In this document: in pieces, positions 17,632 through 64,000 of the stretch
Position numbering within the stretch: the stretch's first letter is position 1
Layout: every line of letters starts with the position of its first letter
Origin: Podarcis pityusensis
Lineage: Eukaryota
DNA: 64,000 bases
Assembly: GCA_964106645.2 (NCBI GenBank)
Contig: OZ067040.1
Strand: one strand, 5' to 3'
Notes under the pieces: model-generated
What the model was told of the DNA's origin: nothing
Databases searched by the model: none
What the model saw: the letters and a program-made list of their open reading frames with translations, nothing else
Position numbers and translations under genes: made by a program

Positions 17632-17715
17632 CCATCATATCCCACTTGGTGTCTCCACTGACTACTCCCACTTGGTCCTGGGTCACTGGAGGATGATTGG
17701 TTGCTCGGTGAACTT
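17632..17715 (-). CDS. SIPA1L2: SIPA1L2 coding exon 10 (84 nt)
   Basis: TTTCAG|A...GG|GTATT; encodes SSPSNQSSSSDPGPSGSSQWRHQVGYD. Confidence 0.92.
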
Positions 17716-18744
17716 CTGAAATAGTGACTCAAGTAATTAACCATGTACACAGTTCTGTGATGCTTCAACAACAATCAATTTTTGATATAAATTCCTAATG
17801 AAATTAGAAATACAGACAACAATATGAAGACATTTGAATAGTTTTTGTGAAATTTAAACCATTTTTAGATGCGGGGACATCTAATGATATGCAGCCTCCC
17901 TTCATCCCCACTTCAGTAGCCCTACAATCTGCTCTGGAGGGGCCTGCAACGAGGGAGCAAGAGACTGGTGAAGTCTGCCCGTGTGATACTGGATGTTTCC
18001 TACAGTCTGCACATTTTCGCATAATGACCACAATTCAGCACTTTTTAAAGTACATATAGATAGATCCTTGCAAGCAATAGTGTCTTTGCGCTCATCCGCA
18101 CTTCCATTTGTCCTGTGATTTCTAGGTACGGGCCTGAGAGGGGATTTTTTTTTGTCCGGCCACTTTCCCTGGAAAAACCCACTGCCTACTACAGAATTGG
18201 AACAAACGTCAATTGGGTTTTCATTTAACTTTTAAGTCATTTCAGTTTTTAAACAAAGACAACATTCCACAAATATCCATTTGCTCTTGGACGTTTATAG
18301 CCATGTTCTGTTGACGTTACAAATATAATAAAACTCTCTTGGAATGAGATGAAAGTATTAACCTGCAAGCAACTAATTTCATTTTTTTAAATGCTTGTTG
18401 CTCTTATTCAGAAGTTCTTATTTTATTGGTCGACTACCACAGTGGCTGAATTTGCCTGGTACCTAGCTTTTATATTCCATTATAAATAGAGAAGAGGGTG
18501 TGAGTTTTAATGTCGTCTACCTTTTAAAGTATTATTAGCACTGACCATTGTTTCAACAAGGATTAGTGGAGGCGAACACTAAGCTCACTGCAGCTCAAAT
18601 CTGTTAAAACCTTGTACAGTAGTATATGAATGAGGTTTAAAAAGAAAACAGCTTTTAAAAAATCACTTCATACCAAAGACCAGAAAGGTTTACTAATAAA
18701 GCACTAAGAAAATACAGGAATTAATAACAGAGAGAACATATTAC

Positions 18745-19002
18745 CTTGCACCATCTGGCAGCTTTCTGTCAAATGAAGTACTGCGAGGAATGGCTGTTTG
18801 CGCCTGCTGGAGAAGCTGCTGGCACTGCAATCTATCAGATGTTCCTAGGATTGGAGAGGCACGAGAAAGAGGCTGCCCTGCAGGAGCTGGCACCCGATGC
18901 CAAGTAGTATTCCTCCTGAAAGGGGTTTTATACTCACATGGGGTGCCTTCACTGTCAAGTTTGTACTCCACCATGGGAATTCGACACAGTTCTGAGCAAC
19001 CC
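18745..19002 (-). CDS. SIPA1L2: SIPA1L2 coding exon 9 (258 nt)
   Basis: CAG|G...AG|GTAAT; encodes GCSELCRIPMVEYKLDSEGTPCEYKTPFRRNTTWHRV...STSFDRKLPDGA. Confidence 0.95.
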
Positions 19003-20840
19003 CTGCAGTATACATAAACGTAATAATCCCTGAGTCTTGTAGAGATACAGCCCATCATTTTTAAAAAAGAAGTATAGCATGTGCATGTCATAAAATTATA
19101 TATTATATCAGTTATATCGTAATATAAAATATGACCCATCATCTGTACTCTTACACTAGATTATGTAAAATTTAAGTTGTCAGAGATAAAACTGAATGCA
19201 AAGCAGCTTTTCCATTCCAAGGGAAACCTGCCTGCTGAACATGCCGCTAGTATCCCTGGTGTCCAAGATATCTTAGAGTAAACAAGGAAGACTTCAGTGG
19301 GGTTGAGGGGTTATTTTATTACCCACAAGTTCACTGAGGGCCCAACTAGAGGATACATTAGCTCCATATCTGTGTTGTTTAAGTGCAGAGGACTATTTTT
19401 TTAAACACATACTCCCTGCCCAGGTGGCCAAGCAGTATTAAGACCCTATTATGGAGTAAGGGGGCTTTGACCCTTTAGCCTCCTTATGGTACCAATTCAG
19501 ACCAGGCTTCCCATGCTGGCTTCTTGCATGGGGAAAGCGAGCTTTAAAAGACACACTGTGCTAATTGCAAGTTTGAGGGGCCAAATTGACTGCAAAGGGT
19601 TAAAACCTTCATGCCCCATCATTCTAAGGTCCCAGTCTAGATTGCCAGTAGAGAGATGGGCAATCTTTTTTTAAAATAATAATAATAATAACAGCACCAC
19701 AATACCTAGCACTTAAGGGCAAATATACGGAGCCTTAAAACTCATCTAGAGGTTATTTGAATGGCTTCTCAGCAGGAAAAGGGCAAATTTACCAGCTGAG
19801 CCCTACAAAGCCCAAAGCTTGAAGAAGTGGCGTTTTCTACCTACAGTGGTCACTAACACAACAAAAACTGAAGCCGATGCTAGGACAGCATCATCTACGT
19901 TAAGTATGGCTAGATTTTTTTAAAATCAATGACCTGATCAAGCCTGAGTTTTGAGATAATATAACATGGACCTTTGATTTCAATGGATTTTCCAGAGTTT
20001 GATTTCAATGGTCTGTAGACTCACGAGGCTGAAAATCTTTAGCCATGGGAAGCACAGGGTCTAGCCCATCTGTCCACATTGGGAAGGAAAATATGCTGAA
20101 CATGTCAATACAACAGGGATAAAGCCTGGGAATAGATTAAGGTAGCAAATTAGCTATCCCTCCTGTTCACTGGACATATGCCTGTGGTTGTGAAATGCAG
20201 TGACAGAAGCTTGATCTGGATATGGGGTAACAAAACTTAGGGCAGTGGTGTCTTTAACATTTTGACAAGCACAGAAGGTGGGAAACCGGACACACATAAT
20301 CTATTATAATTTGTCCCAGTTGCTGATTGTGGACTGGAGTTTTAACCTTTATAGAAAAGTATCGGAAAGAAAATCATGTGAGAAAAATTTTGGAAGTGGA
20401 GAGTACTCTTTTTCCAGGGGCAGATAACTTGGAAAACCTCGTAAGTTTCATGATCATGTCTTCATCTTAGGATTTCCATCATAAGCGATGTCCACTAGTA
20501 TTGTCTCTAAGTCCCCTGCTGTCATATTTTCTGGTCTCTGAAGGAAAGGTAGTTGAAGAGCAAAACAGTGTTTTCGCCATGAGATGTAAAGTGAATTCCT
20601 TGTTGTTAGGGTAGTAGAGTCATAAACATTGTACAATTCAGATAGTTGGGCATCAAACAGGACAACATGATATATATGGGATCAGTTATAAGGCAAGTCA
20701 TGACATCATATGAATTTTAGAACCTGTGATGACTTCCTTGTCTCTGGTCTCTTGAATCAGGGTTTAAGATGTGATCTAGTATGTTGTATATTCCCCCATG
20801 AACAAATATTTCACAGCACAGATCTGTCTTTACAAAGCAA

Positions 20841-20889
20841 AGGAAAGGAAAGGAAAGGAAAGGAAAGGAAAGGAAAGGAAAGGAAAGGA
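20841..20889. repeat. (AGGAA)~10 microsatellite
   Basis: Directly visible; it produces the KGKER repeats in the ORF track. Confidence 0.95.
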
Positions 20890-22667
20890 GTCTTTCACAA
20901 GAGGGTTCTATGTTCATATTTAAGAGATTATATGTTTATATTAAGGTCAGTTTTAGTTTTAAACCAATTCCCAAATGAATAGTTGAGTTAGCCTGTTCTT
21001 GCAAAAAAGTCTTACGGCACCTTGAGCCTTTGATGTTATGCAATAACCTTCATGGTTTCAACCACATTATTTTTAGAAGAGAAACAGATTATAGACTGAA
21101 CTTTTAAAAAATGTAAGATTACTTTTATCCATTTTTATTCACCTTGGTTGGAAGTAGTAAAAAACAGTGGACTCTGGGGAAAACTATACTCAGTCCAGTC
21201 TGCTAAGAAGGCTTCAAAGAGTCGGATAATCCAGGAAGAGCAGACATTCTTTTAAAGAGGCAGTTGAAGAGTCTCATATTACAGGAAGTTTATACTGCAG
21301 AAAATCCCTTCTCCTTCTGTTGGGGTAGATGATGACTTAGGAGCCTGTAGAAGGGCTCTGACTTTTCTAGACTTTTTGCTGTCTGCAGCCTATCCTAAGC
21401 TATGGATCCAACTGTTTTGGAATGGCACCAGTGATAATCAGGAGAATAAGTACCAAAAAGTGTTATTTCATACTTGGAAGCAGATGGCAAAAATCTCCAA
21501 ATGAAGCTGAGAAAATCTTTCAGCTGCCAAAGGCAGCACATGTGTGGCAATATGAGTGGCAGCAATAAAGGGATAATTTCCCCCATTTCACTCTAAGAAA
21601 TTAATTTTTGGAGAACATCCATAAATAAAATGCAACATATATATCACCAATTCTACAATGCTATAGTTAAATATGTTAATGTGGCAGTCATACACAGCAA
21701 GCACTCTCCCTATTAAAGAAAGCAACTGAACGCTTGAATTAGCTGAGATAAAAAAATCATTTATTAAAGCGGGTATAACGGACATGTATTCTGTCCTCAT
21801 AATATCTATCTGCCTAGCTACAAAGGCACATCTAGCACAAGGCTGCCTCTTTTAACCTAAGTTTCCCTTTCTGCTTTCTCAATTTCTTCCTTGCTCCATC
21901 TGTTCTGGATACTTTTAGTTGAAAGTGAGAAATGGAAGAAAACATTGGTTGCCCAATCTCAAAAAGAATATTTAGAGCTGAAAAGGGTGCAGAAAAGCAC
22001 AAGCAAAATGATTTGGGTTTGGAATACGTTACCTATGAGGACAGAGCATGTGGACAAGCAGTAGCTAACATTTTTGGTGCTGAGGACTGCATCGACCTAT
22101 GGCCAATCCCTCAGGGGCTGCATGTCAATGTGAGTGTAGTCAAAGCCAAACCTTCTTAACCATTTGCCTCATTAAATATACTGAGTATCCTCACCCCTTT
22201 CCTCAATATTCCTTATTACTTTCTATCCTTTCCCCCCTTATTCTTCATTAATTTCCATTCCATTCCAAAAGCCATATTAATTTCTACTCTATTTCCCTAT
22301 TTCAAACCCCTTATTAATTTTCACTCTTTTCAAAAACATTGATTAATTGCCACCACTTGCCCCACTTATTCCCATATTGATGCTTTCCCCATTCTATAGT
22401 AAACAGTTCACTTTATTCAGAAAGCACTGCTCACTTAACTAAAAGCAACCAGTCCCCCCAGTATACAATCCATCCTTTATTAAAATAACTTATAAGATCC
22501 ATTCCATCTATTACAAGATAGCACTTCTCTCACAGACTGTGTTAGCTGCAAGTCTCATTAGCACCAAATGAGCACTACCCATTTAACAAGAAAGCCATCT
22601 GTGAAAAGGGCAAAAGAATGTCAGCAGTGAAGACACAAATAACCTACTAGCTACTGTGACTTCTTAC

Positions 22668-22942
22668 CGTCTAGGTGATCCATCTTCATGTGGCTGGATA
22701 ATCACCACCTTTACAGTCACAGAAGTGCGCAGCAGGTCAATCATTTGTTCATGAGTCAGGGTTGCTACAGCTACTTTACAGATCTCCACAAGGCGACTGC
22801 CTTGACGTAGGCCAGCTTTCCAGGCAAAACCAAATGGCTCCACATCTGCTACAATCCCTTCAAAGTTAACATGGAATCCGAGCTGTCCCAAGCCATTTCT
22901 CCTTAAGGTCATTTCTGTTGTTTCACACCCTCTAGTTACTAT
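22668..22942 (-). CDS. SIPA1L2: SIPA1L2 coding exon 8 (275 nt; PDZ domain)
   Basis: TAG|ATA...CG|GTAAG; encodes [56 protein letters not shown]...EDGSPR. Confidence 0.97.
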
Positions 22943-24353
22943 CTAAAGGAATAAGAAATTAGTGAGACCACAGTATAAAAGAATAGTGATGTAAAAATTC
23001 CAGAAATGGTGAGCTGTGGGTAGGGTGATATTGAAATGGTTTTTAAAATGTGATTTTATCCCCCTGCCATTAAGAACAGTGTAATATTTATTATAACCTA
23101 TAAGATAAAATTTTATTGTTTGATATGTTTCTGAAATCCAAAAGTAATAACAACTTTGTTTTATTAGAACAATTATAAATCAGTGTCATGATGGAACCAA
23201 TACATAAGAGCCACACTGTTAACTGGGACTTACTCCCAGCTAAGTGTTTAGGATTGCAGACTTAAGGTCTTCCAATTATTCTATTTGTGCTAGCATTCCA
23301 GCTTGCCAAATGGAACAATACGCTTCCCCCTGCACATTGTTCTGGAGGTTCTCCCAACCCTCTAAGCCAATTCTGGAAGGCATGGGGGGGGGGGGGGGGA
23401 GAGATGGGGGAAGCCTTATAGCACAAGTGAAAGTCCTTGCACAAGGCTTCCACTGACAGGGCTGGTTAGGTGAATCCTAACCTAAGTAACCTAAAAACAA
23501 GATGAAAATAAAAATTGTTTGCTATATTACAGTGTATAGTAGTTGTGTTATTGTGAGACACCCTGTAATTTTATTTTTTTATTAAGGGCCATGCATAAAT
23601 ATTTTAAACAAATTCTTAAAAGAGGAGTCAAAAGCCAGCCTGTACAAAGTCCACCAGGTTTCAGAATCAAAATGACTGGAATACTCTCATAATGTACTTC
23701 TGGACCAAACACTCACAGATGTACTCTGCAACTTCTGAAGTAAGTTTCCAACATCAAGATAGAAAATAATTACTTCTTCAGTAATCCTGTCAGACACAGT
23801 ATCAGTTCTGTCATCAGTCTTATTACTGCTTTGGAATCTTAAAACTAAACTTTTTCAGCAGGGTAAATTAACTGTCGGATTCTTTTATACACATTAGTAT
23901 TACACATTCTGAAATGTGCATTTCCTAAGAGATCCCCCCCTCCCAACTACCAATTGTTCAGTAATCTGTTTCTAGTCTTGCATGCACACCCACACCCACT
24001 TTTCATATACACCCATTTCTTTTCCACCACTTTCTTTTTTTTTTTTAACCAAGCCTTCACATCTCCCTCACTGGACACATGCCTTCTGAAACATGTAAGG
24101 AACTGCTTTCAAACAATGCAAAGTCACATGTACTAATATATTATACCCCTCGGGTAGCTAATATTGTTTTTGTCATTCATGGCTGACTAGCGATTTCTGA
24201 ATAAAGATGTTGTTCTCCAAGCTCTAACATTTGATGCCCCTGGAGCAACCATCTGTGCTGTGTCCAGTTTCTAAGACAGTACATTTCTCTTACTGATTAC
24301 TATAACAATTCAGGGATTGTTTTGTTTGTAGAAGACTTAGCAGCTGCCTTATA

Positions 24354-24718
24354 CAGTGGTGCCCCGCAAGACAAATGCCTCGCAAGACGGAAAACCCGCT
24401 AGACGAAAGGGTTTTCCGTTTTTGAGTTGCTTCGCAGGACGAATTTCCCTATGGGCTTGCTTCGCAAGACGAAAATGTCTTGCGAGTCTAGAGATTTTTT
24501 TTTCGCTTTCCCCCCCTTTATCTAATCTGCTAAGCCTTTAATAGCCTTTAATAGCCTTTTAGCAGCTAATCCGCTAAGCCTTTAAGCCTTTAATAGCCGC
24601 TAAACCGCTAATAGCGCTAATCCGTTAAGCCGCTAATAGGGTTGCTTCGCAAGACGAAAAAACCGTTAGACGAAGACTCTCGCGGAACGGATTAATTTCG
24701 TCTTGCGAGGCACCACTG
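24354..24718. mobile_element. Young Tc1/mariner-superfamily (Tigger/pogo-like) MITE, 365 bp
   Basis: TA TSD at 24352-24353 and 24719-24720; 19-bp TIR CAGTGGTGCC(C/T)CGCAAGAC; CpG-rich. Confidence 0.92.
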
Positions 24719-25158
24719 TATTAAACAAGGAAGCAAAATAGTAATTTACTGAAGTCTTTACAGGTACAGATCACCTTTTTTCATTAGAACAATGCTAAAT
24801 TATTGTAACCTGACTCATTTGACTGGGTCAGGTTATATATCTGAACAATATAACACACTTAGAGAGAATCTGAATTAAGTGAAAATTCTCTATTATGCTT
24901 AGTAGAATTGTCTGGATTTTTATTTCTTGAAATATGGCAACCCTAACTGTAATAAAAAGGGAGAATTCTGTTTCAGACTACAGCTGCCACGTTTCCAGTT
25001 TAAGCCTGGAATACAGAAATACCCTTGAAATAGTCTGGTAAATTTTTCATTTTTAAAATTCTATAGTCAGGTATCATATTTATCCATCTCCATTATCTTG
25101 AAAAATTACTGACAATAGCATTTGAAATTGCCAAGCACTTAAAAGAAACCATACTTAC

Positions 25159-25735
25159 TTCCAGTCTTTGAACCATTTCTCTGATGTCGTCAGCACAGTT
25201 ATCAAGTGCTGAGAGAAGAACACATTCTCCTCTTTCATAAAAAACTTTAACACTCATTAATCCAGATGTCCATCCAATAACATCTCTGCAGGAGCAGTTG
25301 AAAACAACATTCTTTGATTCCTTTTCAATCAACACGATGAACTCATTTGAGATACCAAGAAGACATTCAATGTCAAGGGACTGACCAAAGTCTCGTGCTA
25401 TCACATTCCATATCACTGCTCCAATGCTGAATAAGTGGGCATCCTTCCTTGGTTTCACTCTCTCTTTTTTCTTTGCTCCCAGTGTAATAAAACTAAATTT
25501 GACTGATGTGTCTACTGTAGCAGTAGTAACAAAGTTTTCTGCAAGGTCTTTCAAGTACTCTTGCCGTGTTCTAGTGGCCATGGCTCGAAATTTTTCTGAC
25601 TTGTGTGCTGCATTTTCTGCATTAATAACTTTGGCCAAAAGGAAGTCCCGGAAAACTGCTGATTTAGGGAAAGTCACTCCTTTAGGTATTGGTGGCCCGA
25701 AAGGTGGTACATCTTTTGACCTTGAAACTCCAACA
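25159..25735 (-). CDS. SIPA1L2: SIPA1L2 coding exon 7 (577 nt; end of RapGAP and linker)
   Basis: TAG|T...GAA|GTAAGT; encodes [49 protein letters not shown]...REMVQRLE. Confidence 0.96.
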
Positions 25736-26913
25736 CTAGAAAGTGAAGAAAACTTATTATAGGATCAATGTTTTGTAAGTTATTTTAACTAAAACATTAT
25801 TTGTTTATACATAAGATATTCATGCACCTACCAAGGACAAGAAAAAATTATATAATAAACTACCTCAAAACTCTTCAAAAGCAGAAATTGTCAGGAATTA
25901 CATTTGCAGCAAATTGAGAAAAATAAAATCATAGATTTGTAGAGTTGGATGGAACCACTAGGATCATGCAGTCCAACCCTCTACAGAACTCTTCCTAACT
26001 GAATATATTTTTTATCAAATTGAAAATGTGCTGCATCAAAAAATTTAATATTCACAGAGCACAAATGTTGTTGTACCAACCCATCATAAAATGGTGTGTT
26101 ACAGATGCATGTACATGAACACTAAATATATAGATCAGCGTACTAGTGTATAAACAAATGCACAATTTTTTAATGCCATATGCCTAGAATGCACTCCTAT
26201 TCAGTATTGATTCATGGTATGAACATATAAGCATGCCACGATCCATTATGGGCTACCTTAGAACTGAGTCAGTTACCCCACTTCTCCAGTCTAGAGTCCC
26301 CATGCATATAGAAATTTGTATTAACAAAAGGGCTCAGCTTTCATAAGATTGCTTCTTGTCCTTGAATAATTCAGAGATTTAAATATAGAGACTACGTTCT
26401 ATAGGTACCATACAACTTATTTTTATTGAAGCTAGCAAGTTTCCTGAACCTTACTAATATTTCTTTAAAGTACTGTCATTTTTGGTTTTAGGGTGCAATC
26501 CAAACCCTCTCAAGCCATCATTTGGACTTTTTGGAGCAGTACATCCACCACCCATCTGCACTCTGGTTGCTCACTGTGGCCAAAGATGAGGAGGTACAAG
26601 ACAACTGGAACAAATTCCATCATCCGATGGCAGTGATCCCAGTGGATCCCAGTGTGGTTTAGCCCCTCCCTGAGGCACCCCATTTGGGGGCTTGCTGCCA
26701 GCCCCCACAGGCAAGGATATGGCCAGTGGGTCTCCCACTAAGCTCATTCATTGAGTGGAAGGGGGAGGTTGGTGCCATGATGGTTGGCTGGGTGAGCTGG
26801 GAGCACAGGTACATGGAAAATGCAGAAAAGGCTGATAAAGCAAATAAACAATGGCCCCAGCAATTTCCAATGAAAGCCTAAGAAACTAAGGCAATTGACA
26901 AACCTATACTCAC

Positions 26914-27071
26914 CTATAGCACACATTTTCAGTGCAAGGGTTGTGGACTTTAACAATGACAAACACATGTTGAAAATGAGAACGGATATTTTTTGGAGTG
27001 AAAGGAAGCGCTCCAGGCTCTTGGAAGACAATGGTAACAATGTCATTTCCTATGTGCCTTTTCCTTAAAAG
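26914..27071 (-). CDS. SIPA1L2: SIPA1L2 coding exon 6 (158 nt; RapGAP catalytic Asn-thumb helix)
   Basis: TAG|CTT...AG|GTGAG; encodes [52 protein letters not shown]. The KRHIGND catalytic motif is intact. Confidence 0.97.
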
Positions 27072-29009
27072 CTAGATGCAAAACAAACAAACAAAAAAAC
27101 ATTAAAACGGTGACTACAATTTCCTTCACATCCACTAGAAAAAAAGATAACTATTAAAAATGGCAATTATGTATTTTAAAAAACCCTAGACTTTGATTAG
27201 TCACAATGTTCTTGTCTTGGCACAGGCAGCACGCAACCTAAGTACGGTATATTTTACAGGTCTTGCCTATACCGTTTGAAATACACAGCTCTTTAAAAAG
27301 GGGAAAGTGGTGGGTTGAGAATAGGTAAAATCTTAAACCAGTCTTGTTCAAGTATATGAAGCATAGACCCACACTATATAGCCCTTTAATCATTTCCAAG
27401 ATGCAAAATAACTTTTCATATATGAAATAAACATTTCTTGTTTCCTTAAGATGTTTTTCCTCACTGTAGTGGTTTCTATATCGACTAGAAATTCTCAACA
27501 TTTTAAACCAATCTTTCCCCACCATAAAAAGCACAACAGTCACCAAATATCTTCACAGGACAATTTTATTTCAATTAAGTTTGGAAATGCAGCAGTGGAC
27601 AAAGGCAGGCCAAGATCCAAGGATTCCTAAATGTACGTTGAAGCGGTTCAACACAGCTTTTGCCTTTTATTTCCAGCTGCAACTTTCCACACTATTACAG
27701 TAACCTCCCAGACTTTTGGGAACAGCTTTTTGGGTAGTGTGTCTGCAGCAGACTCTGTGAAAGAAAGGGGACCTCAGATATCCTGGCACACATTTAGAAT
27801 CTCTCATGTGGTCCTTTGGATATTGCCCCATGCAGACATTCATATTACAGCTAAAGATGATATTTTGAAGTAACATATCTTAAGTAACATAACCTAGTAT
27901 CAATTTAAATAACTTGTAACCATGTAACAAGCATGTAATTAAAACATCAACCTTTTCTATAATTATTTGGAAAGCTGAAAAGGTGTTGGAAATGTTACAA
28001 TCCAGGAGCTCCACAGACACATACCGATGTTCACATGCAGTTTTCTGGTGAATTTTTACTTCAGTAGTCCACAATAGTAAACCAGAAGCTATTTCAGCTT
28101 CTCTTTGTTAGCTTAAAAGAAGAGCTGTCAGTGAAAGGAAATACTGAAGCAACACAAAGTCTCTGTTAAGTCTATCTACCAGAAAGTTTCGATCTCAGGG
28201 CTTTTGGAAATGGTGCAATACCTTTTTGTTTACTGTGTAAATTTGGGATGTCCAGGATTAAGCTGCTAGAAAATTGGAGATATGACCTCTGCTGTATTCT
28301 GAGGTCTTGTAATTGAATTTTATTTAAAACATTACCTATTACTGGCTTTTGAAATGATGTAGATGACAGACATATGTAAATGAAAATCACAACTGTGGGT
28401 ATGCATCTGGTGCACACTGAGTTATGGTATAGGGTACAACCCAACTCTATTAAAATCAATGAAAGTTTTGCCATACCATTATAAGCCAGTAGCTGCAATC
28501 CATTTTACAGCTACAAACACTAATTTCAGCGTGTTTTTAGTGGGGCATAAATACTTGGGTACAGGTGGACTAAAGTAATTGGACTGGATTGAACTAATCT
28601 GTTGCACTAGCAGAAGCCAGTGCAACAAGTCCTAAGAGATCAATAGGACTTGCCCCCCTCACCTTCACACCAATGCCCCCCCCCATATCTGATTGGGAGA
28701 GTCAGGAGAGCCCCCAAAACAGGGTGCAGAGGGAGGAGTTCATTTTGCCTGGCAAGCAAAAGTAACTGTGCGGATGGAATGATCTCCTTGGGGCAATGCT
28801 GAATTCCCCCCAAAGGCTCTATGGAAGTGAGTTTTATCACTGCTAACATATTACCAAAATAAAAGTTCATGTACAGAACAGCTGTAGTTTCCCATATATT
28901 CAAATTATTCTAAAGTTGCAGAAAGTGACAATAATACCTTTGATTTCAGTTTCCTCTGTTAACAGTGACAGATTAAAAATCAGGAAACAGAAGTAAGAAG
29001 TAAATATTT

Positions 29010-29124
29010 CAGGGTTAGCCAACATGGTGACCTCCAGATGATTTGGATTACAACTCCCATCAGCCTTGATCATTAGCCATGCTGGCTAAGACTGAAAGAA
29101 GTTGCACCACATTGGCTATGCCTT
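29010..29124. mobile_element. Foldback hAT-type MITE, same family as 9301-9436 (internally deleted)
   Basis: CAGGGTTAGCCAAC...TACAACTCCCATCAGCC...GCCATGCTGGCT...TTGGCTATGCCT. Confidence 0.6.
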
Positions 29125-31825
29125 CAGGAAAGTGTACAAACAGAATGAACATTTTGCCTACTCCAGTCTGTGTGAGGAAAGGCATGTAACAGCTAGTTGA
29201 GTGGAGGACAGATTTTTTCCAGGGGATCTCTAGAAGGCCCACTTATGGGCTTCAAAGGTTCCTGACTTTGGATGACATGCTAAGCAAAAACATAACTTAG
29301 CTCGGCAAAGTGCAGCAGCAAAACAAACTAGAGAGGGGCAAAATGGACAATTTCCTTTTTGGGATCCCACATATTTGCCTCAAGCCATGGCTTGGCTTAG
29401 ATATTAGGTGCTAATTGGGTTGAATAATAAATAACAGACATTTGCAATATAAACCTTTCTAAATTATTTTAAAGGGCATCAATAGTTCCTGAAAGGAATT
29501 TGAGTCTTGTCACCAACATGCATGAGCATATTCATTAATGTAATTGTATTAACCTAACCATATAAAACAAATTAGAACTCGTTCATTCTTTAAAATGTTG
29601 GCAAATTGGGTGAGATTTCTGAGGTACAACTAATATTTTAGTCAACATAGCAGACAACCATTATAATCATTACCATAAAGGTCTGTACAACATCATAAAA
29701 AACAGTAATAGAACCATATAATTATAAATGGGGAATTGAAATGCAAGGAACAGGCAAGGAGAGTTAAATAGATGATATTGATATGTAATACATTGATCTC
29801 GGTAGGATTGTATAAATGGAATGCAAATTGAATGGAGAAAAAGGTATGAAAAAAAGAGAGACACTGTTCTGAAAGCTGAAGAAAATGGTATGTAACTATT
29901 ATACAGAGCTTGTTTTCATATCTCTAAGTTCTTTTCCCCTTTCTCTCCTTATTTGTTCAACTGCCCTTCCAACACACTCTTAACAATGATACAATTCAAT
30001 TGGAATTTTAAATATAGTACATAGGTCAAGTGAGATTATTTTCAGGAAGTAACACAATATTGACAACAAGACCCTAATAACAGTTTTCACCTTAGTTCTA
30101 ACACAATATTTACTTGGAAGTAAGGTCCACTGATAATAGTATTTTTTTAAAAAAAAAATGTAGATCACAACCTTAATTGGGGTGGTAAATCTAAATATGA
30201 ATCCAGTAAAATATCAGCATTAATGAACTTAATTTTAATATGAAAGAGTATCAAGTTAAGAGAATGTTAGAAAAGAAATATCTACCACCTTTTAAAAATA
30301 ATGTATTCGTTCTGATCTGACCTTAATTGTGGACCTTCAATTTACTTTACTGGCTCTGTTTTCCCTAACATGCTAATCAAATGTGATTTTAAGTTTTCCA
30401 GATAATCTGAAATAGGATGCACCACCTAATCTGTCCCTTTAGCATATTTTTATTCATCTCTAAGCTTCCCAAGCTAGATTGACCATTATCGGACAGCTAA
30501 AGCCACAGCAATCTATTTCTGTAAGCCTTAATTGCTCAAGCGAAAGCAACAAAGCTATCCTGTCATATTGCATAAAGCATCTTTCTTCATTCAATTTAAT
30601 GGGGGGGGGGAATGAAAAGACATCACAAGAAACCTTCAAGCTTATTTTAATTTAGTAATAAAATAAGTGGTTTCATAGTAAGTTTGCATTATAATATGTT
30701 AATATTTACATATACAAAGATCACATATTTCAATCAGACCTGATTAAAACTAGGAAAATTCCAAACACTGAAGAAGCATTTAATCTTACATACCAAGACA
30801 GTAACTCGTTTTCATTTTTTTTATTATTATATCAGACAAGGAGATAACTTGACAAAAGATTTGGATTAATCAGATCTGACCAAAGATAACAAAAGCAAAT
30901 GGCAGAAGTGTGAGGAAATATTGCAAGGAAATGATCTGGAAAGGGTGTCTACAAGGGTAAAAGTTCAACAGGAGAAGCCTTTAACTGTGATGTGTAAGGA
31001 AAGCCAATACAAGGAGGTGGTACTGGCCACACCAGAGTGGGTAGCTCCCTCTGTTCTGATCAGAACACAGAGTGAAGACTCCCCACCCTATATTGCAGCC
31101 AAAGTGAAAAATTACCTGTGTGTTTGGATCTCCTGCTCGCTCTAAAACTAGAGGGATGTCCTGATCAGTGACCAAGCAGGGCGTAGTTATTTCCTAGAAA
31201 AAGCAACAGACAGTTCTGGTGTGGCCTATTTCTGGCTCACAGGTAATTGGATTTTATGAAATGTTCATTGGAGATAGTGCTCACAGTAGCTGGCTACATA
31301 CCTTGGCCAGTGACCATATGAGGTATAATGGATGTATAAACCTATTCACACCATAATTTCAGTGGGAGGCTAGACCTCTAGATCCCATTCAAATCTAAGA
31401 TGGGAAGTTCCCACATGACTCGGATAAGTGGATGAAACAAGATAAGCCCTGTACACAAAGTAAAATTTCTATACCACAGGGCTGGTAAGACTGTTCCTTC
31501 AAGACAGCAGCAACTTTATCTGTGATGCTGAATCTTAGCTTCCTGTGTGTCTCAGAGGGAAAGGTTTGTTATTTTATGTGAATTGTTCCTAGCTTGTCAA
31601 GAATACTTCCATGGGTGCATTCTACATTATATAGTTTGGCAAGGAGGTACCAACAGAAAGAGAAAATAAACATTCATTAGCTATTTCTTCTACACATTAA
31701 GGCTGGCTAAATGTTGATTACTAGAGTGTGCTTATCACATTTTATTGAAAAGTGTCCATGCTGTGCAAATACCACTGGCATCCAGTATCATAAAAAATAA
31801 TGTGGGGGGCCTTCAGATCTCAGTT

Positions 31826-44089: not shown

Positions 44090-45114
44090 TACTGATATGG
44101 CATTCAAAGGAGAAAGAAGTGAAACATTCCACTGGACTACGGCAAGCCCCTTGCATCAACCTTCTTAGCTCTTTGAAACCAAGGCTTAGTTATCATCATA
44201 GTAATGCCATTAATAAGGTGAGCCTGAGTAGCATCTAGCCTTCAGGCTAAACAGAATTCTTATTTGCATCTTCCAAGCCTCCACAAAATATGGTCAAAAC
44301 CTATGCGCATTCAAAACTAGCTAACATCCTTTTAAGTTTGATGAGAAGGGTAGGAGATGTTGAGTTCTAATCCTTCCTGCAACCTATTTTTCCTACTCTG
44401 ATTGAATGACTGAGGGAGGACACTGAGACTTTTGGGTGAGACAGAACAAGGGATGCAAATCCTCCCACTCCCCTCAAACCCTACATGTTAAGGAGAAGTG
44501 CAGGCAGAATGGGAGCTCTACATTGCCTAGAGCCTCCTAAATATATTCCTGGGAAAGGACTAAAGAGAAGGGGAGAAGAAGCTGTTCAGAGGAGTGGGGT
44601 TGAATATTGCTTCCCCTATTAGATTCCTCATGGTAGAAGTTGGGATACCCACTGTCTGCAGGTTTTGCCCACTTTATTTTTTTATTACACAAAGTGAATA
44701 GCTGCTATTCACTTATATGGAAGTAAGAGATGACATACATGGATGAGCACAGTTCTTAAGAGGATAGTTAAACTGACAGTGCAGTAAATGTCATTGTGAC
44801 TATTTTCATAGGCTAGTCAAATGTGCTTTAAACATTTTCATAACTGACAAGTCTATATACATAGTTTCTATTAAGATAGTAGGTTTTAGTTTACACAGAT
44901 TATATTCCAACACATATTTTTTTTAAAAAAAGAATATTTAAGTCGCAATGGATCTAATATAAAGAATTTCCACATTTTTGGAAGGTGGACAGACAGAATT
45001 TTCTTTTTGCCAAATCTGACTATTTATACACATGCAAGTCCCCAAATCAAGCAATTATTTGTTTAATAACATGCCTCTTTTAAAAAGTGATAAAAATAAT
45101 CTGAATATATTATC

Positions 45115-45223
45115 CTTCTAGCTTTGCCTTCACTGGCAGTAGGAGTGGGAAATTTCATTCCCATTTCTTCTAGCTTTGCCTTCACTGGCAGTAGGAGTGG
45201 GAAATTTCATTCCCATTTCTTCT
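45115..45223. repeat. Perfect 52-bp tandem duplication with 5-bp CTTCT microhomology
   Basis: CTTCTAGCTTTGCCTTCACTGGCAGTAGGAGTGGGAAATTTCATTCCCATTT twice, then CTTCT. Confidence 0.95.
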
Positions 45224-45254
45224 TTGAACTTACCGGTACTTCAAGAGTATTCAC

Positions 45255-45680
45255 CAGTGGCGTAGCGTGGGGGGTGCAGGGGGGCCCGGCCGCACCGGGC
45301 GCAACATCGGGGGGGGCGTGCTTGCACTCGCAGCTCTCTGCCCCTACCTGGCTCACTCACTCTCTCTCACTGCAGTGCTGGCTGTGCAAATCCGATCCGA
45401 GCCGCTGGGTCGCCGCCCACTGTGGAGGGGGTGGGTGCCAGGCGTGCGGTGCGGAGAGAGAGCGATGGACTATCTGGGGGAGGGACAGTGCAGTGGCCGC
45501 CCAGCGCAGCGCTGAGCGCGGGAGAGAACCACACCAGACCAGACCAGGCAGCAGCAAGAAGAAGCTGGCAGCGGCGGCAGGTTAGGGGTTAGGGGGCGCA
45601 AATTACTTGCCTTGCCCCGGGTTAGGGGGCGCAAATTACTTGCCTTGCCCCGGGTGCTGACAACCCACGCTACGCCGCTG
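45255..45680 (+). mobile_element. Young non-autonomous hAT-type element, copy A (426 bp), with GC-rich interior
   Basis: Perfect 8-bp TSD GTATTCAC (45247-45254 and 45681-45688); 17-bp TIR CAG(T/C)GGCGTAGCGTGGG; two 33-bp subterminal repeats. Confidence 0.93.
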
Positions 45681-46119
45681 GTATTCACAGAACCTTACTT
45701 TTCCATTTTTTGAATTTTAAATGTTTTCCTCTCCTTACTGTTTTATATTTTCCAATTTGAATTGTTGCTTTTAGCTTATGATTGCACATTTTAATTAAAG
45801 ATTTTATTTTGAAATTTTGCGAGCTGTCATGGAAACCTACTTGAAGCATGGGGCAAAGATGGCTAAAACTAATAAAAATTATTTACTAGTTACTTTACAG
45901 TCTTGCTTGAGTACCTTTCTCGAACTTGTCCTCCTTTGATGAGTCCTAACTGATATATCATTTTCTGGTGCATTCCTTTTGTCCTTCAGAGTTCACACAG
46001 CTCAAATTCTCTTAGGCTGTGAGTAAATGCCATTGAACTCAATGGGACTTACTTCTAGAAAACATTAAATAATCCTGCTGTTATTCCTTCAGCTATTTCC
46101 AAATCCTCCTGTGCTTTTC

Positions 46120-46260
46120 GTGTACTGTCTACCTGGCTGTACTACCTCCCTTTCTGAGCTGATGGTGTGTGGTGTTGGAGAACCCTTTTACAGCAGTGTT
46201 GGAAGACTTCAACATCCATGCTGAGACTGTCTCCAATGGGCTGGCTTGGGCCTTCAAGGT
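46120..46260 (+). mobile_element. Degenerate LINE (L2-like) endonuclease fragment
   Basis: GTGTTGGAAGACTTCAACATCCAT encodes VLEDFNIH, a decayed GDFN motif of APE-type endonucleases. Confidence 0.4.
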
Positions 46261-47739
46261 TCAAGAGAGCTTCAGTTTTCTGTGAGAGGCTTATAGCATT
46301 GTATAAGCCTCTCTCCAGAGCACCCCGGAAGATTTCAATCTCCCATGGGGTTTCTGTCTACATGCTGTTGTCCATCACATAGGAAGAAGGAGTATGTTCT
46401 TAATGTATTTCACCTAACACCACATACCTTGAATAAGAATCAACATTAAAAGTTATTTCATAGTCCATACATACCATACAAACATTTAATAATAAATAAA
46501 AATATCTGCTTCCACTTAAAGCTAAGTAGAGGCAGGTATTTATTATATACCTAAATTTTATCACACTTTGTTTTAAAACCCAGATTTTGTCCAATTCTCA
46601 AAGCAGCAGCCCCCTAGCACATATTTTAGACAATTACAATTCTGCATTGTAGCTTTCGTAAATAGGAAACTGGTAAGAATGGCCCCTAAACTTTGAGAAA
46701 ATAGTTTGAATATTTTTATAAATATCCTCAGAAACAAAGAAACAGCATGTGTATGCACATGCACAACATACTACTGAATGACTCTTAAAAACAAGAATAC
46801 ACTCAGGGGAATACACTCATAGTACCAAAACTAGATGGAAGATGGTCAAATGCATTTAACGCTTTATAACAAATATGGTTTAATGCTTTTTTTACCCAAA
46901 AGCAATTCCTCCAAGGGCCACATGCCAGTGGTTGACATGGCCAATGCATGTCAATGTGCACACACATTCCTAGAAAAACACTACACATACAGAACACTCA
47001 GACCTTCCCTGCCCCCGCACACACATTCCTTAGATATGTGGGCACACAGCCCACAAACATGTTCACACACCAAATGCACAGGGACAGATATGCACGGGCA
47101 CACATTTTAACCCTCTCCACTCAAATGCTGGGGTAGGTGGAAATGCTGCCATTTATTCTTAAAGAGCAGGTACCAGACTCTTTCTCTGATCTTGAGTGTT
47201 CTGCTGCTTAGCACCAAGACTGAAGATAAAATCTCTCTCCCTGCCCTTTAGAAAAGATCTTTAGAGAAGTTAGTTCTTTAAAGAGTAGATAGAGCTCTAT
47301 CTCCTGATCAGATTGAGAGATAAAGTTGGAGGTGCTGGAACTACTTCCTGTGCCTTGGCGGGCAAGATTCAGACCATGGGTTAATCACACTTTATGCACT
47401 TTTAAAGTTCAAATGCGGCATTTTGAGTATTTTTAAACATATCTGTAGCAATATTAAACCCTTGTTTGCACTAAGTATGGAGTTTAAAACTCATCACATC
47501 ACCCTCACATGTATTAGGCGCTTATGAAATTAGCTGGTTTATTTGTATAAAATACTAGTTAGAGAATAAGAGCATATCACTTATGGCATTTTGATGGAAG
47601 ACAGTTTTTTGTACTTGTTTTTTGTACTTGCTGCAACCACTGACAGTGTGATACTCTCACACTCCTAACTCCTTTAATCTTGTCGTTCAGAATAGGAGAC
47701 CAGATTATGGTTTTCATTAAAGATGTCAAAGCATATGTA

Positions 47740-48319
47740 CAGCGGCGTAGCGTGGGTTATCAGCACCCGGGGCAAGGCAAGTAATTTGCGCCCCCTAACC
47801 CGGGGCAAGGCAAATAATTTGCGCCCCCTAACCCGGGGCAAGGCAAGTACAGTAATTTACTCTCCCAAGCAGCAGCAGCAGCGAGGCTTCTCTTTCCCCC
47901 GCACTCTCCTGGAGCTGCCTCTTTTCTTTCCTTTTTTCCCTTTCTCCAAGGCTTTTCGCTTTCTCTCCTTAATTGATTCCTCCTCCACACCGCAGCGTTT
48001 CCTAGCTGCTTCCCCCCCCCCTTCCCCTCTCTCTCCTCCTCGCTCTGCTTGCCTTGCCCTGCACCGGCAGCAGCAGGCGCAGCCAGACCCCCGCCAGCCA
48101 GCCCGCCCGCCCGCCCACCCGGCTTCCTCTCCTTTTTTTGCCCGCGGCAGAAGGCTTCACTCTCCCCCTTCCGCGACCTCCTCGCCAAGCCGAGCGAGCG
48201 CGGGCTCCCTAACCCATGGATTTTAGTAGGGGCAGAGAGCTGCTAGTGCGAGCGCGCCCCCCGCCCATGTTGCGGCCGATGCGGCCGGCCCCCCTGGCAC
48301 CCCCCACGCTACGCCACTG
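47740..48319 (-). mobile_element. Young non-autonomous hAT-type element, copy B (580 bp), inverted relative to copy A, with a different GC-rich interior
   Basis: Perfect 8-bp TSD CATATGTA (47732-47739 and 48320-48327); same TIR; 2.5 copies of the 33-bp repeat. Confidence 0.93.
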
Positions 48320-48565
48320 CATATGTAAGAACATGACACCAAAGTCAGAGAAACACAACCCCAATAGTAAATCATTAATATTAAATAAGTAGGTTGGGGC
48401 TTTCAATACTTTAAGGAGGGCCACAATGATGCCCTCTAAGACACATATTAAAAAAGGAGAGCTTCATTTTACATCAGATATTTTCACATCTCACAACACT
48501 ACCCACAAGTTCAGCCAATGTTTTGAAACCTTTGGGAGTAAGAGATTTCAGAAAAAATTGCTTAC

Positions 48566-50024
48566 CTTTTCCATAGAAAAACTTTCTATAGTAATATGCA
48601 CCAAGATCAATGTGCTCGATGATATAACGTTTCACTTTCTCCCTGTGGATTGGTTGATTCTCCCTGGGTACTTCCAGCACCGAAACACCGGCATTCGTGC
48701 AATGTGAACTTAGCGAAGACTCAAAAGAACAACTATCTCCTGCACAAAAAGAAGCTGAGTTTGCCCTAGAGAGCGCAATCCGCCTATCACCTTCCCCACC
48801 AGTTTCATTCCTGAAATAAGGACAGTTCAGTACTAGGTCATTACTTTTCCCATCACCTTCATCAGCATCTAAGTTCTCTTTTGAATTGAGATCCTCTTTA
48901 CTCCCCATAGGAGATTCACAGCTTCCAAGCTGTCCGGCTACTGTTGAAGTTTGTGATGCAGCAGATGCCCCAGTGGTTATATTTTTTCTTTTCCCCACAT
49001 TAATTCTGGTAACCATTGCTTCATTAATGTTAAACAGAATGCTCTGGACATCATAATGTGCAAAACACTTCTGACAATTCCAAGCATGAACATTTTTATC
49101 AAGTCTACTTTCTTCTAGTTCAGATGAGAATTTAAGAGTTTCATGTTCACTTTTAGCAGTCCGCAATTTTCTAAAGAGTGACGTTTCTACAGATTCTGAC
49201 TTCAATCTCCATTTGAAAGATTTGTCCCGGTCTCTGCCAATTAGCAGGGCACTATCCATGTAGTCAAGTCCAGAAATTCTTACAAATTCTCCTCTGGAAA
49301 TCTGTGCTGCAGCATGCAGGCTTGGAGAAATTGTCGGATCGCAGTGAAAAAATTCAGGAAATCCAAATGGCATGTGTGTTTTATGCTCAAAGTTTTCCAC
49401 CCTGTAGCCTCGAAGCATTGCAAAAAAATTCTCACCAGATAAACCCTGTCTGTCAATTGATGAAGTGCTTCCATATTCCCTATGGAGAGATGCTCCTGTA
49501 TTTGGATTAACAGCATTCTGGTCTAGTACATCCTCTGTGTCAATGTCACTGATTGTAACATCACTGTTGCTTCTTTGTCTTATAGGGTGAAGCCCTCTGT
49601 GTGGTGAATGGAGAAAAATGTCTCCTAATGCATACTTTGCCTCTGCAAATTCTATATCAAGGGGTTCTTTTTGCTGCCCCTCATTCTGGTCACCATTTGC
49701 TGACCCAGCACCGTCATAACTAACTTGAGGTCTACTTTCCCATGTAGCTTTGCTTAATTCCTTGGTACAATCTTTCTTAGGAGGCCATTCAGATACTCTG
49801 GCTCGGACACCCATCTTAGGCATAGCTGGGGTACCATTGGAAGGGTTGCTGCTTTCACCTTTGTTGGTTGCGCTTAAAGAAGAAGGAGGGCCCATATTAC
49901 CATTTAGAGCCTTAAATTTTCTTGCAAAATAGTCATCAGACTGCATAATTCTTGCTGATTCCTTAAACTTTAAGGAAGTTCTGCTGGATTTGTGTTTTTC
50001 TTCCTGTGATGTGTGATCACTCAT
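48566..50024 (-). CDS. SIPA1L2: SIPA1L2 coding exon 1 (1459 nt CDS; N-terminal region)
   Basis: Lies in ORF 48474..50030, whose first codon is TTG; the real ATG is at 50024. Encodes MSDHTSQEEKHK...YYYRKFFYGK. Donor AAG|GTAAG at 48566, phase 1. Confidence 0.96.
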
Positions 50025-50257
50025 ATCCAAGCAATGGGAAGGGAATGCAAAGCCTTATATTCAAGAGCAGTGCTGTTGGCCTGCCATTTCCATTATTTAT
50101 GAAGTGAGGTAAGAAAGAGTTACAGTGTCTGTGCGTATCAAAAGATCTTTCAGGTTGTCATTCCAGAAGGTAGTTCAGTAGGACTCATTTCTGGGTCTGC
50201 ATTTTATAACTTCGGATCAAGATCAAGTTGATAGCAATTCACTTTTACTCCACATAC
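50025..50257 (-). promoter_or_regulatory. SIPA1L2: 5'UTR part of the first coding exon (233 nt), containing 4 short uORFs
   Basis: Acceptor TCTTCTTCCCTTTTGGTTGACAG|G at 50257. uORFs at 50255-50223, 50202-50185, 50188-50150 and 50093-50061. Confidence 0.75.
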
Positions 50258-63389: not shown

Positions 63390-63636
63390 ATGCGTCTCTC
63401 CTGAGGGTGAGGCGGCGGGTGGACTGCCTGCAAGCTCTGCACTGCTTTTTTGAGCAGCGCAGGGCTTGCGTCTGCCCACCACCTCAGCCACCTTATAGCT
63501 GAGGGGGAGGCTGCGGAGAGGCTTCACGCAGCGCGCCCTGCCTTGGCTCGCCCCGCCCCCATGGGCGGTTCACTTTGCACCCAGCTGCAGTGCGCGTGCG
63601 CCGCACCAGGCACCCAAATGGCTAGCTACACTGCTA
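63390..63636. promoter_or_regulatory. Small GC/CpG-rich promoter-like patch (GC box, NRF1-like site), possibly transposon-borne
   Basis: GCCCCGCCCCC at 63550-63560 and TGCGCGTGCGC at 63591-63601, with sharp boundaries against AT-rich flanks. Confidence 0.4.
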
Positions 63637-64000
63637 CTTAGACCATCTATACAATTTTTTTCAAAACTGAATACGTATATTATCTCATTAAGTTCAAAGC
63701 AGTAAGAGACAGCTACTACAGCAAACACAAGTCAATGGTTAAGATTTTGCTGGGATCCATTTTAATTTATATGAACACTCAGAGTAAGCCAACAATTCTG
63801 AAGCCAAACTGTGTTTTTAATGTCCTTAAAGTTGCATTATTGGAATAATTCCATCTGTAATTATTTCTTAGGTAGCAAGCAGTTTTTTCATTGGGGTCCT
63901 GCATTTCATGTTTTCCATCAACAATAGTTCAGAAAACAGCACAGATAAATGATAACCATAATGAGCCCAATAGCCTTCCTAAATCCAAATTTGGCAGCTC

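What the first reader, a model, noticed from the sequence alone, without database searches (positions are those of the whole stretch)
45255..48319. Pack-like hAT family: same ends, different captured CpG-island-like cargo
Seen: two independent insertions, each with its own perfect 8-bp TSD. They share the 17-bp TIR, a ~94-bp left end (45255-45347 vs 48319-48226) and a right end of 33-bp tandem units GGTTAGGGGGCGCAAATTACTTGCCTTGCCCCG (45587-45680 vs 47849-47740). The interiors (45348-45586, 239 bp; 47850-48225, 376 bp) show no similarity I can find. Both interiors are GC/CpG-rich and non-coding, and read like vertebrate promoter or first-exon sequence (GCA/GCG runs, CT-rich tracts). Cargo A ends in a donor-like GGCAG|GTTAGG. 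Known: an 8-bp TSD with short CAG-initial TIRs indicates the hAT superfamily. Host-fragment capture by non-autonomous DNA transposons (Pack-MULE, Pack-CACTA) is mainly described in plants. Inference: this may be a recently active vertebrate Pack-type family that picks up and redistributes regulatory DNA.
Basis: partly seen in the sequence, partly recalled or inferred. Interest (0 to 1): 0.78.

Follow-up and report, generated by a model that had tools for sequence, protein, structure and literature searches.

The report
Two subfamilies of a lizard hAT MITE
Two small cut-and-paste transposons in a lizard intron share their ends but carry different GC-rich middles; each middle marks a many-copy subfamily, one very young and partly built from non-transposon DNA, a pattern already described for lizard hAT elements.

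Summary
Element A (45255-45680, +) and element B (47740-48319, -) each have a perfect 8-bp target duplication. They share 17-bp CAG inverted ends, a ~93-bp left end and 33-bp right-end units. Their interiors do not align.

The interiors are not one-off cargo. In contigs of public runs each is highly repeated. A's is repeated in this species and its closest relative. B's is repeated in this species only, and lies at single-copy depth in the closest relative.

B is absent, as a precise empty site, from the same locus in two related species. It is therefore a young insertion.

In the closest relative, single-copy-depth contigs match two pieces of B's interior. The match stops within a base of where the transposon backbone resumes. 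B's interior also sits inside a split 33-bp unit. This favours acquired filler over a deletion derivative.

A host promoter or first-exon origin is not shown. The 'donor-like' GGTTAGG belongs to the element's own unit. The ends are as CpG-rich as the interiors. Five of six listed private changes are CpG decay.

This scan has noted the same pattern on other DNA of this genome (37 notes). Comparable lizard hAT families and vertebrate Pack-hAT elements are published.

The parts
45247..45254 (.). Left copy of element A's 8-bp target-site duplication (GTATTCAC)
   Evidence: identical to 45681-45688
45255..45680 (+). Element A, a 426-bp non-autonomous hAT-type element of the A-type subfamily
   Evidence: the interior is highly repeated in organisms A and B
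45255..45347 (+). A left end: 17-nt terminal inverted repeat (45255-45271) plus GC-rich subterminal region ending in GCCCCTAC
   Evidence: 89-92% identical to 48319-48226
45348..45579 (+). A-type interior (subfamily-specific filler). Its last ~40 nt, from 45539, are shared with another variant in organism E.
   Evidence: no similarity to B or to the rest of the window; 13-26 distinct contigs and very high summed depth at 45388 and 45466; loose end at 45539 in X13
45580..45652 (+). Partial unit GGTTAGG (45580-45586) followed by two perfect 33-nt units (45587-45619, 45620-45652)
45653..45680 (+). A right tip, including the terminal inverted repeat at 45664-45680
45681..45688 (.). Right copy of element A's target-site duplication
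47732..47739 (.). Copy of element B's 8-bp target-site duplication (CATATGTA)
   Evidence: identical to 48320-48327
47740..48319 (-). Element B, a 580-bp non-autonomous hAT-type element of the B-type subfamily, read left end to right end on the minus strand
   Evidence: precise empty site in X3, X13 and X17 contigs (records 27, 5, 13)
47740..47859 (-). B right end: terminal repeat (47740-47756), two 33-nt units, and the distal two thirds of a third unit that is split by the interior
47860..48042 (-). B interior piece 1. Of it, 47860-47968 matches the end of a 586-nt contig of single-copy depth in the closest relative; that contig carries no element end.
   Evidence: X3 record 28 and X13 record 6
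48048..48059 (+). 12-nt copy of the unit motif CTTGCCTTGCCC, inverted relative to B's own units, lying between the two interior pieces
   Evidence: (I17); the homology of X3 and X13 contigs to piece 2 starts 2 nt after it
48061..48207 (-). B interior piece 2. It matches contigs of the closest relative (572 nt, depth 7.9) and of organism E (382 nt, depth 71), with unlike sequence on both sides.
   Evidence: X3 record 29 and X13 record 7
48207..48225 (-). Backbone linker (TAAAATCCAT on the minus strand) and the first 9 nt (GGGTTAGGG) of the split 33-nt unit
   Evidence: the same linker joins the left end directly to an intact unit in cargo-less contigs (tables 5, 5c, 7)
48226..48319 (-). B left end with the terminal inverted repeat at 48303-48319
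48320..48327 (.). Second copy of element B's target-site duplication

Best explanation
A and B are ordinary insertions of two amplified subfamilies of one hAT-type miniature transposon (MITE) family of lacertid lizards. The family backbone is short: a ~93-bp left end, a ~10-nt linker, one to three 33-nt units and the right tip. A transposase encoded elsewhere moves it in trans. That enzyme was not found here; it is inferred to recognise the 17-nt terminal repeats and subterminal motifs. The stretch between the left end and the first unit is a hot spot where filler DNA gets incorporated. This is inferred to happen by interrupted, template-switching gap repair after excision, the textbook route for internally rearranged hAT, P and Ac/Ds derivatives. 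Each filler was acquired once in a founder copy and then multiplied by transposition. The 'cargo' therefore marks a subfamily and is not a fresh capture at this locus. The A-type filler is older: it is abundant in this species and its closest relative, and the A insertion is shared with that relative. The B-type filler is composite, with two pieces separated by an inverted scrap of the element's own unit. At least part of it comes from DNA that exists outside the element. It expanded only in this species. B inserted here after the split from the closest relative. Both copies lie in an intron of a SIPA1L-like gene and are decaying at CpG sites like methylated DNA. Shown: the anatomy, the multi-copy status, the empty sites and the element-free matches. 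Inferred: the mechanism of filler uptake, mobilisation in trans and the hAT transposase.
For: Anatomy, TSDs and TIRs. Repetition of the interiors. The single-copy flank depth is 25 in X2, 5 in X3 and 12-14 in X13. A's interior bins sum to 155,000-257,000 in X2, 72,000-91,000 in X3 and 1,250-10,600 in X13, with 13-26 distinct contigs at 45388 and 45466. B's interior bins sum to 14,900-30,300 in X2 (11 contigs at 47903), 4-9 in X3 and 73-1,565 in X13. Empty site for B: X3 record 27, X13 record 5 and X17 record 13 join 47730 directly to 48319. B is present in an X2 sample (records 20 and 22 enter both of its tips). A is present in X3 (record 25 starts at 45654). Cargo-less form (tables 5, 5c, 7): contigs join about 45344 to 45618, or 47802 to 48229, through short linkers such as AAAATCCA; a dozen different short linkers are seen. 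Split unit around B's interior. Element-free matches ending at 47860 and 48207, within 1 nt of the backbone junctions: records 28, 29 and 7. One independent A-type junction appears in an ENA contig product (P0001). Private differences of these copies from the contig majority are at 45319, 45323, 45388, 45466, 47903 and 48159; five of the six are CpG transitions, with P about 4e-4 if 15% of positions are CpG. Literature: lizard hAT non-autonomous families with like ends and family-specific centres that include captured genomic DNA (PMC3014272); gap-filling with template switching for animal Pack-TIRs, most of them hAT (PMC8277862).
Against: All runs laid were Logan contigs. The tool states that summed contig depth is not a copy number, so copy numbers are order-of-magnitude guesses only. 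The flanks of the element-free contigs could not be read, so 'no element end' rests on the absence of further aligned pieces for those records. In organism E the same pieces have several-fold to about 50-fold depth, which fits a repeat source as well as a host source. No autonomous partner or transposase was seen, so the hAT assignment rests on the TSD length and the terminal CAG motif. No source was found for A's interior. The 12-nt inverted unit motif inside B could be a chance match (rough expectation about 0.01).
Confidence: 0.7

Rival explanations
1. One reading: a Pack-type family that repeatedly captures host CpG-island promoters or first exons and spreads working regulatory DNA around the genome.
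For: Both interiors have GC 0.61-0.67, with 2-3 GC boxes and no TATA. B's outer pieces exist outside the element at single-copy depth in the closest relative. Earlier notes of this scan report one family member carrying the CRPPA gene start (s1-732213) and another with promoter-like cargo (s1-725623); I did not test these. A frog hAT that captured and amplified a 5'UTR is published (PMC8277862).
Against: No donor was tied to any gene. The interiors hold no coding first exon: the only ATG-led frame in A depends on a private T at 45466, where all other contigs have G. The 'splice donor' is backbone. The element ends are just as CpG-rich. These two copies lose CpGs as methylated DNA does. The pieces are multi-copy in organism E. 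There was no usable RNA evidence: X17's kind is only a guess, and it also holds the intronic empty site.
Confidence: 0.22
2. Both interiors are remnants of different parts of one long autonomous hAT element, i.e. ordinary multi-deletion derivatives. The 'element-free' contigs of the closest relative would then be internal parts of that autonomous element.
For: This is the commonest origin of non-autonomous hAT families (PMC3014272). The single-copy-depth contigs in X3 would fit a low-copy autonomous element. No autonomous element was available to compare.
Against: B's interior lies inside one 33-nt unit: 9 nt of the unit lie on one side and 19 nt on the other. Cargo-less contigs carry that unit intact right after the same linker. 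A deletion origin would therefore need three deletions, and the short form would need a deletion that exactly rebuilds a unit. The B-type interior is at single-copy depth in a relative that has the family ends and the A-type in abundance.
Confidence: 0.12
3. The interiors are pieces of other repeats (other transposons or low-copy repeats) picked up as filler, not host single-copy DNA.
For: 47871-47969 is present at depth 668, and 48061-48207 at depth 71, in organism E against 12-14 for single copy. Anolis hobo-type fillers 'often contain TEs of other classes' (PMC3014272). An inverted scrap of the family's own unit lies inside B.
Against: The depth in the closest relative is single-copy-like (4-9 against 5). 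No known repeat was recognised, but no repeat library was available here.
Confidence: 0.2

Closest known systems
Non-autonomous hAT (hobo_AC and hAT-N) families of Anolis carolinensis (Novick et al. 2010, PMC3014272)
   Same: Both are squamate hAT elements forming many non-autonomous families. These have near-identical ends and family-specific central regions produced by indels, recombination and incorporation of extraneous genomic 'filler' DNA. Non-autonomous copies number in the thousands.
   Different: The Anolis hobo-N families are 1.3-3.4 kb; the elements here are 0.4-0.6 kb MITEs with tandem 33-nt subterminal units. The termini were not compared, because no Anolis sequences were available here. 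An autonomous partner is known in Anolis but was not found here.
Animal Pack-TIRs, especially Pack-hAT-N8_XT of Xenopus tropicalis (Tan et al. 2021, PMC8277862)
   Same: A hAT backbone with TIRs and TSDs carries non-element DNA. The filler enters through breakpoints inside the element by template switching. The frog case carries a 291-bp 5'UTR piece and has transposed.
   Different: That survey found only four multicopy Pack-TIRs in 100 animal genomes; the example it describes in detail has three copies. Here each filler-bearing form is represented by many distinct contigs and very high summed depth. That survey defined the parental gene; here no parental gene was identified.
Pack-MULE and Pack-CACTA elements of plants
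   Same: Shared transposon ends surround different acquired interiors that are GC-rich, and the loaded elements amplify.
   Different: A different superfamily (Mutator or CACTA, with 9-11 or 3-bp TSDs). Plant cargo is demonstrably made of gene fragments, often several per element; that is not shown here.
Ac/Ds and P-element internal-deletion and filler derivatives
   Same: Non-autonomous derivatives keep both ends and carry short or long filler at the internal breakpoint, generated by interrupted gap repair after excision. The dozen different short linkers seen between this family's left end and first unit (table 5c) look like such products.
   Different: The mechanism is inferred here, not observed. 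The copy numbers here are far higher than for typical Ds or P derivatives.

Membership tests
hAT superfamily | 8-bp target-site duplication | tested here: met
   Perfect 8-bp duplications flank both elements. The empty-site contigs in relatives hold a single copy of B's 8 bp (records 27, 5, 13).
hAT superfamily | Short terminal inverted repeats beginning 5'-YARNG | tested here: met
   The tips read CAGTG or CAGCG, within a 17-nt repeat with one mismatch between the arms. The YARNG rule is from my own knowledge of the superfamily.
hAT superfamily | Weak target consensus nTnnnnAn | tested here: inconclusive
   A's GTATTCAC fits; B's CATATGTA does not fit on either strand. Two sites are too few to judge.
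hAT superfamily | Mobilised by a hAT (BED finger / RNase-H-like / hAT dimerisation) transposase with matching termini | not testable with these tools
   No transposase is present in the window; the long open frame at 48474-50030 is a SIPA1L-like exon. None is present in metagenome contigs with like termini.
MITE | Small (under about 800 bp), non-coding, with TIRs and TSDs, and high copy number | tested here: met
   The elements are 426 and 580 bp, with only low-complexity open frames. Thousands of contigs were laid on the ends and interiors: 4476 in X2, against two or three long ones for the single-copy DNA.
Pack-TIR (transposon that captured host DNA) | Internal sequence unrelated to the transposon family backbone | tested here: met
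   A cargo-less form exists with the linker joined to an intact unit. The A and B interiors are unrelated to it and to each other.
Pack-TIR (transposon that captured host DNA) | A parental copy of the internal sequence elsewhere in the genome, without the transposon ends | tested here: inconclusive
   For B, contigs of a sister species match 47860-47968 and 48061-48207 with unlike sequence beyond the junctions (records 28, 29, 7). Their flanks could not be read and this species' own genome could not be searched. For A, nothing was found.
Pack-TIR (transposon that captured host DNA) | The parental sequence is a gene or gene part (promoter, UTR or exon) | not testable with these tools
   There is no coding content to search. 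The word search with the translated interior gave nothing, which says little. No annotated lizard genome is within reach.

The most novel reading that the evidence does not exclude
A hAT-type MITE family of wall lizards that is active now or was very recently. It serially takes up GC-rich gene-start DNA and amplifies each load to hundreds or thousands of copies in a species-specific way: B-type about 10^3-fold in this species against single-copy in a relative whose flanks differ by about 0.5%. It would thereby seed promoter-like, CpG-rich modules across introns. That would make it the first high-copy Pack-TIR system in an amniote, and a natural experiment on the birth and silencing of CpG islands.
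Probability: 0.2. Interest if true: 0.75.

Novelty: new member of a known kind. Interest (0 to 1): 0.4.

Why it matters
If the depth figures reflect copy number, a DNA transposon subfamily rose from about one copy to about a thousand copies between two very closely related lizards. Recent DNA-transposon activity is uncommon in amniotes. It would provide insertion polymorphisms useful for wall-lizard population genetics and a possible source of regulatory variation. The family also offers clean examples of how filler enters a MITE: a split 33-nt unit and many alternative linkers. Multicopy loaded TIR elements are rare in animals (four cases in 100 genomes in PMC8277862). For annotation, these elements create false CpG-island signals in AT-rich introns. 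The same pattern was flagged 37 times by this scan's readers, and those flags are better handled as one repeat family than as separate discoveries.

Tried and rejected
(1) Splice-donor or first-exon reading of the end of cargo A. Rejected: GGTTAGG is the start of the element's own unit, and T at intron position +3 makes a poor donor (own knowledge).
(2) CpG-island status as a mark of cargo. Rejected: the ends have the same CpG o/e.
(3) A donor nearby in cis. No similarity of either interior to the rest of the 64-kb window beyond 11-17-nt chance matches.
(4) An RNA gene as cargo. No Rfam match at E up to 1.
(5) Reaching other copies through predicted proteins. The translated B interior gave no hit. 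The translated A left end plus interior gave one ENA product, P0001, with a different flank and the A-type junction.
(6) Metagenome scans. The 24-nt unit core gave nothing. The 18-nt terminal repeat gave 56 loci, mostly GC-rich bacterial chance hits. A few contigs of 41-50% GC match 30-37 nt of the tip, and four carry terminal-repeat pairs (L034, L041, L046, L056). They show no clean TSDs, no long open frames and no transposase domains. This gives no autonomous partner.
(7) Expression. The run guessed to be RNA (X17) holds family ends at high depth, but also the intronic empty site at depth 2.7, so it cannot be told from DNA. No claim is made.
(8) Whether A is absent in organism E. X13 record 2 reaches 45681 and runs on for 1159 letters. 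The first-bin depth of 5.02 equals 12.2 x 47/114, as expected if that contig also covers 45167-45254 with one 52-bp unit. The joint was not among those listed, so this stays unresolved.
(9) A literature search for the 12-nt tip of the terminal repeat found no paper.
Full report
**What is there**

Reading 45100-48500 and the repeat search confirm two separate insertions.

- Element A spans 45255-45680 on the + strand. Identical GTATTCAC octamers flank it.
- Element B spans 47740-48319 and reads left end to right end on the - strand. Identical CATATGTA octamers flank it.
- The 17-nt terminal repeat CAGYGGCGTAGCGTGGG occurs four times in the 64 kb, exactly at the four tips, against 0.01 expected.
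- The 33-nt unit occurs four times, two per element, against 0 expected.
- In a pairwise alignment the ~93-bp left ends and the right ends match at 89-98%. The interiors are at random level.
- Neither interior resembles anything else in the window.

**Anatomy of the backbone and where the interiors sit**

Contigs of public runs laid on the region (tables 5, 5c, 7) include many that jump from the end of the left end (about 45344-45347, or 48229 seen from B) straight to a 33-nt unit. They pass through a short linker such as AAAATCCA. About a dozen different short linkers are listed. A cargo-less short form therefore exists, and the stretch between the left end and the first unit is variable.

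Element B keeps that linker and the first 9 nt of a unit (GGGTTAGGG, 48207-48225 on the minus strand). Next comes about 350 bp of foreign sequence. The rest of the same unit (AAATTAC...TTGCCTTGCCCC, 47859 downwards) then resumes. B's interior therefore sits inside a split unit.

In element A the interior follows GCCCCTAC directly. It ends at a partial unit, GGTTAGG (45580-45586), which is followed by two perfect units.

**The interiors are subfamily markers, not one-off cargo**

Four runs were laid.

| Run | Organism | Relation to the window |
|---|---|---|
| X2 | A | The window's species: 1 difference in 2115 nt of single-copy DNA |
| X3 | B | 8 differences and 6 gap letters in 1738 nt |
| X13 | E | 33 differences and 20 gap letters in 1295 nt |
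| X17 | E | A small run whose kind is only a guess |

Summed contig depths were as follows.

| Region | X2 | X3 | X13 |
|---|---|---|---|
| Single-copy DNA between the elements | 25 | 5 | 12-14 |
| A's interior bins | 155,000-257,000 | 72,000-91,000 | 1,250-10,600 |
| B's interior bins | 14,900-30,300 | 4-9 | 73-1,565 |

A's interior has 13-26 distinct contigs at single positions. B's interior has 11 distinct contigs at 47903 in X2.

The tool warns that summed contig depth is not a copy number, so I use these figures only as orders of magnitude.

- The A-type interior is very abundant in this species and its closest relative, and much rarer relative to the ends in the more distant one.
- The B-type interior is abundant in this species only.

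A product from an ENA contig (P0001) with a different flank and the same junction of left end to A interior is one small independent confirmation.

**Age and activity**

- Contigs of X3 (record 27), X13 (record 5) and X17 (record 13) join 47730 directly to 48319. This is the precise empty site for B with one copy of the octamer.
- X2 contigs enter both tips of B from the flanks (records 20, 22), so B is present in that sample of the species.
- A is present in X3 (record 25 begins inside its right tip).
- Whether A is absent in organism E could not be settled; a depth calculation hints that it is.

Against the majority of family contigs, the window copies differ at 45319, 45323, 45388 and 45466 in A, and at 47903 and 48159 in B. 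Read in context, five of these six are CpG to TpG or CpA changes. That is far more than expected if about 15% of positions are CpG (P about 4e-4).

Both ends and interiors have CpG o/e 0.62-0.78, against 0.20 for the window. The CpG richness therefore reflects youth. The copies are decaying as methylated DNA does and are not behaving as protected CpG islands.

**Is the interior captured DNA?**

For B there is positive but incomplete evidence.

- In the closest relative, a 586-nt contig of depth 6.7 matches 47860-47968 with its last 112 letters. Its first 474 letters fit nothing on the stretch, although the element's right end lies just there.
- A 572-nt contig of depth 7.9 matches 48061-48207 in its middle. 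It has 237 unlike letters on one side and 192 on the other, although the left end lies 18 nt further on.
- A 382-nt contig of organism E shows the same limits, 48061-48207 (records 28, 29, 7).
- The outer limits, 47860 and 48207, coincide to within one base with the points where I had placed the backbone junctions from the split unit.

Pieces of B's interior therefore exist outside the element. Together with the split unit and the intact unit in the short form, this makes acquisition of filler more economical than a multi-deletion origin from a long element.

Between the two pieces lies a 12-nt copy of the unit motif in inverted orientation (48048-48059). This suggests more than one template switch or an inter-element rearrangement.

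Three caveats apply.

- I could not read the contigs' flanks.
- In organism E the pieces are at about 5-fold to 50-fold depth, so the source may be a low-copy repeat.
- Nothing ties the source to a gene start.

For A no source was found.

**Mechanism (inferred)**

A hAT-type transposase encoded elsewhere binds the terminal repeats and subterminal motifs and moves these short elements in trans. After excision, the break is repaired from a sister copy. Repair that stalls and switches template incorporates filler between the left end and the units. A founder with a given filler then multiplies by transposition.

This is the gap-repair route recalled in PMC3014272 and the gap-filling and template-switching route proposed for animal Pack-TIRs in PMC8277862. 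No transposase was found in the window or in metagenome contigs that carry like termini.

**Comparison with what is known**

- Novick et al. (PMC3014272) describe hAT non-autonomous families in Anolis. [quoted passage not shown]
- Tan et al. (PMC8277862) list 370 animal Pack-TIRs, of which 208 are hAT. They include a frog hAT that captured a 291-bp 5'UTR piece and spread to three chromosomes. They found only four multicopy cases.

The present family is thus a new member of a known kind. What stands out is the apparent scale and recency of amplification of the filler-bearing forms.

This scan's own notes flag the same pattern on other DNA of this genome. 37 notes fit 'hAT cargo', and the two of them seen here with follow-ups (s1-732213, s1-725623) report a CRPPA gene start and a promoter-like load. 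I used these as leads only and did not test them. From those notes the genome is a lacertid (wall lizard); I did not verify the species.

**Limits**

- The look-up of sequencing runs and read laying allow one call each, and all runs were contigs.
- No lizard assembly or repeat library could be searched.

The decisive genome-wide BLASTN of the interiors remains to be done.

Noticed in passing
window 48474-50030 (- strand): A 518-codon open frame without any Pfam match. Its nearest Atlas clusters are SIPA1L2/SIPA1L3-like (scores 0.98 and 0.92). It ends ...YYRKFFYGK, with a likely splice donor near 48567. Elements A and B therefore lie in the intron just downstream of a large SIPA1L-like coding exon. 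B lies about 245 bp from the exon and in the gene's orientation.
   Followed up: partly
window 63400-63640: A third CpG-island-like stretch (GC 0.65-0.68, CpG o/e 0.6-0.8) in otherwise AT-rich DNA. No terminal inverted repeats and no similarity to the hAT family ends. It could be a real CpG island or a fragment of another young element.
   Followed up: partly
window 45115-45218: A perfect tandem duplication of a 52-bp unit immediately left of element A. Depth arithmetic suggests that the more distant relative has a single unit.
   Followed up: no
window 46017-46056: A roughly 40-bp island of a very high-copy repeat (summed depth 2299 against 25). Dozens of contigs run off on both sides into a shared consensus (...GGCTGCAATCCTATAC / GAGTAGACATGCATAGGATTGCAC). 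It is probably a fragment of a common squamate SINE or LINE tail.
   Followed up: no
L041:433-1650, L046:4-1660, L056:970-1784, L034:156-361: JGI metagenome contigs of 41-50% GC carry elements with the same type of terminal repeat. L041 matches 35 nt of the lizard left tip at 89%. This suggests that this terminal type is spread over other eukaryotes. No transposase and no clean 8-bp duplications were seen.
   Followed up: partly
window 45431-45646 and 45539: Organism E carries further variants of the A-type. One is a 214-bp internal deletion with the filler GGTGC. Another shares only the last ~48 nt of A's interior (from 45539) behind different upstream sequence. A's interior is therefore itself a mosaic.
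   Followed up: no
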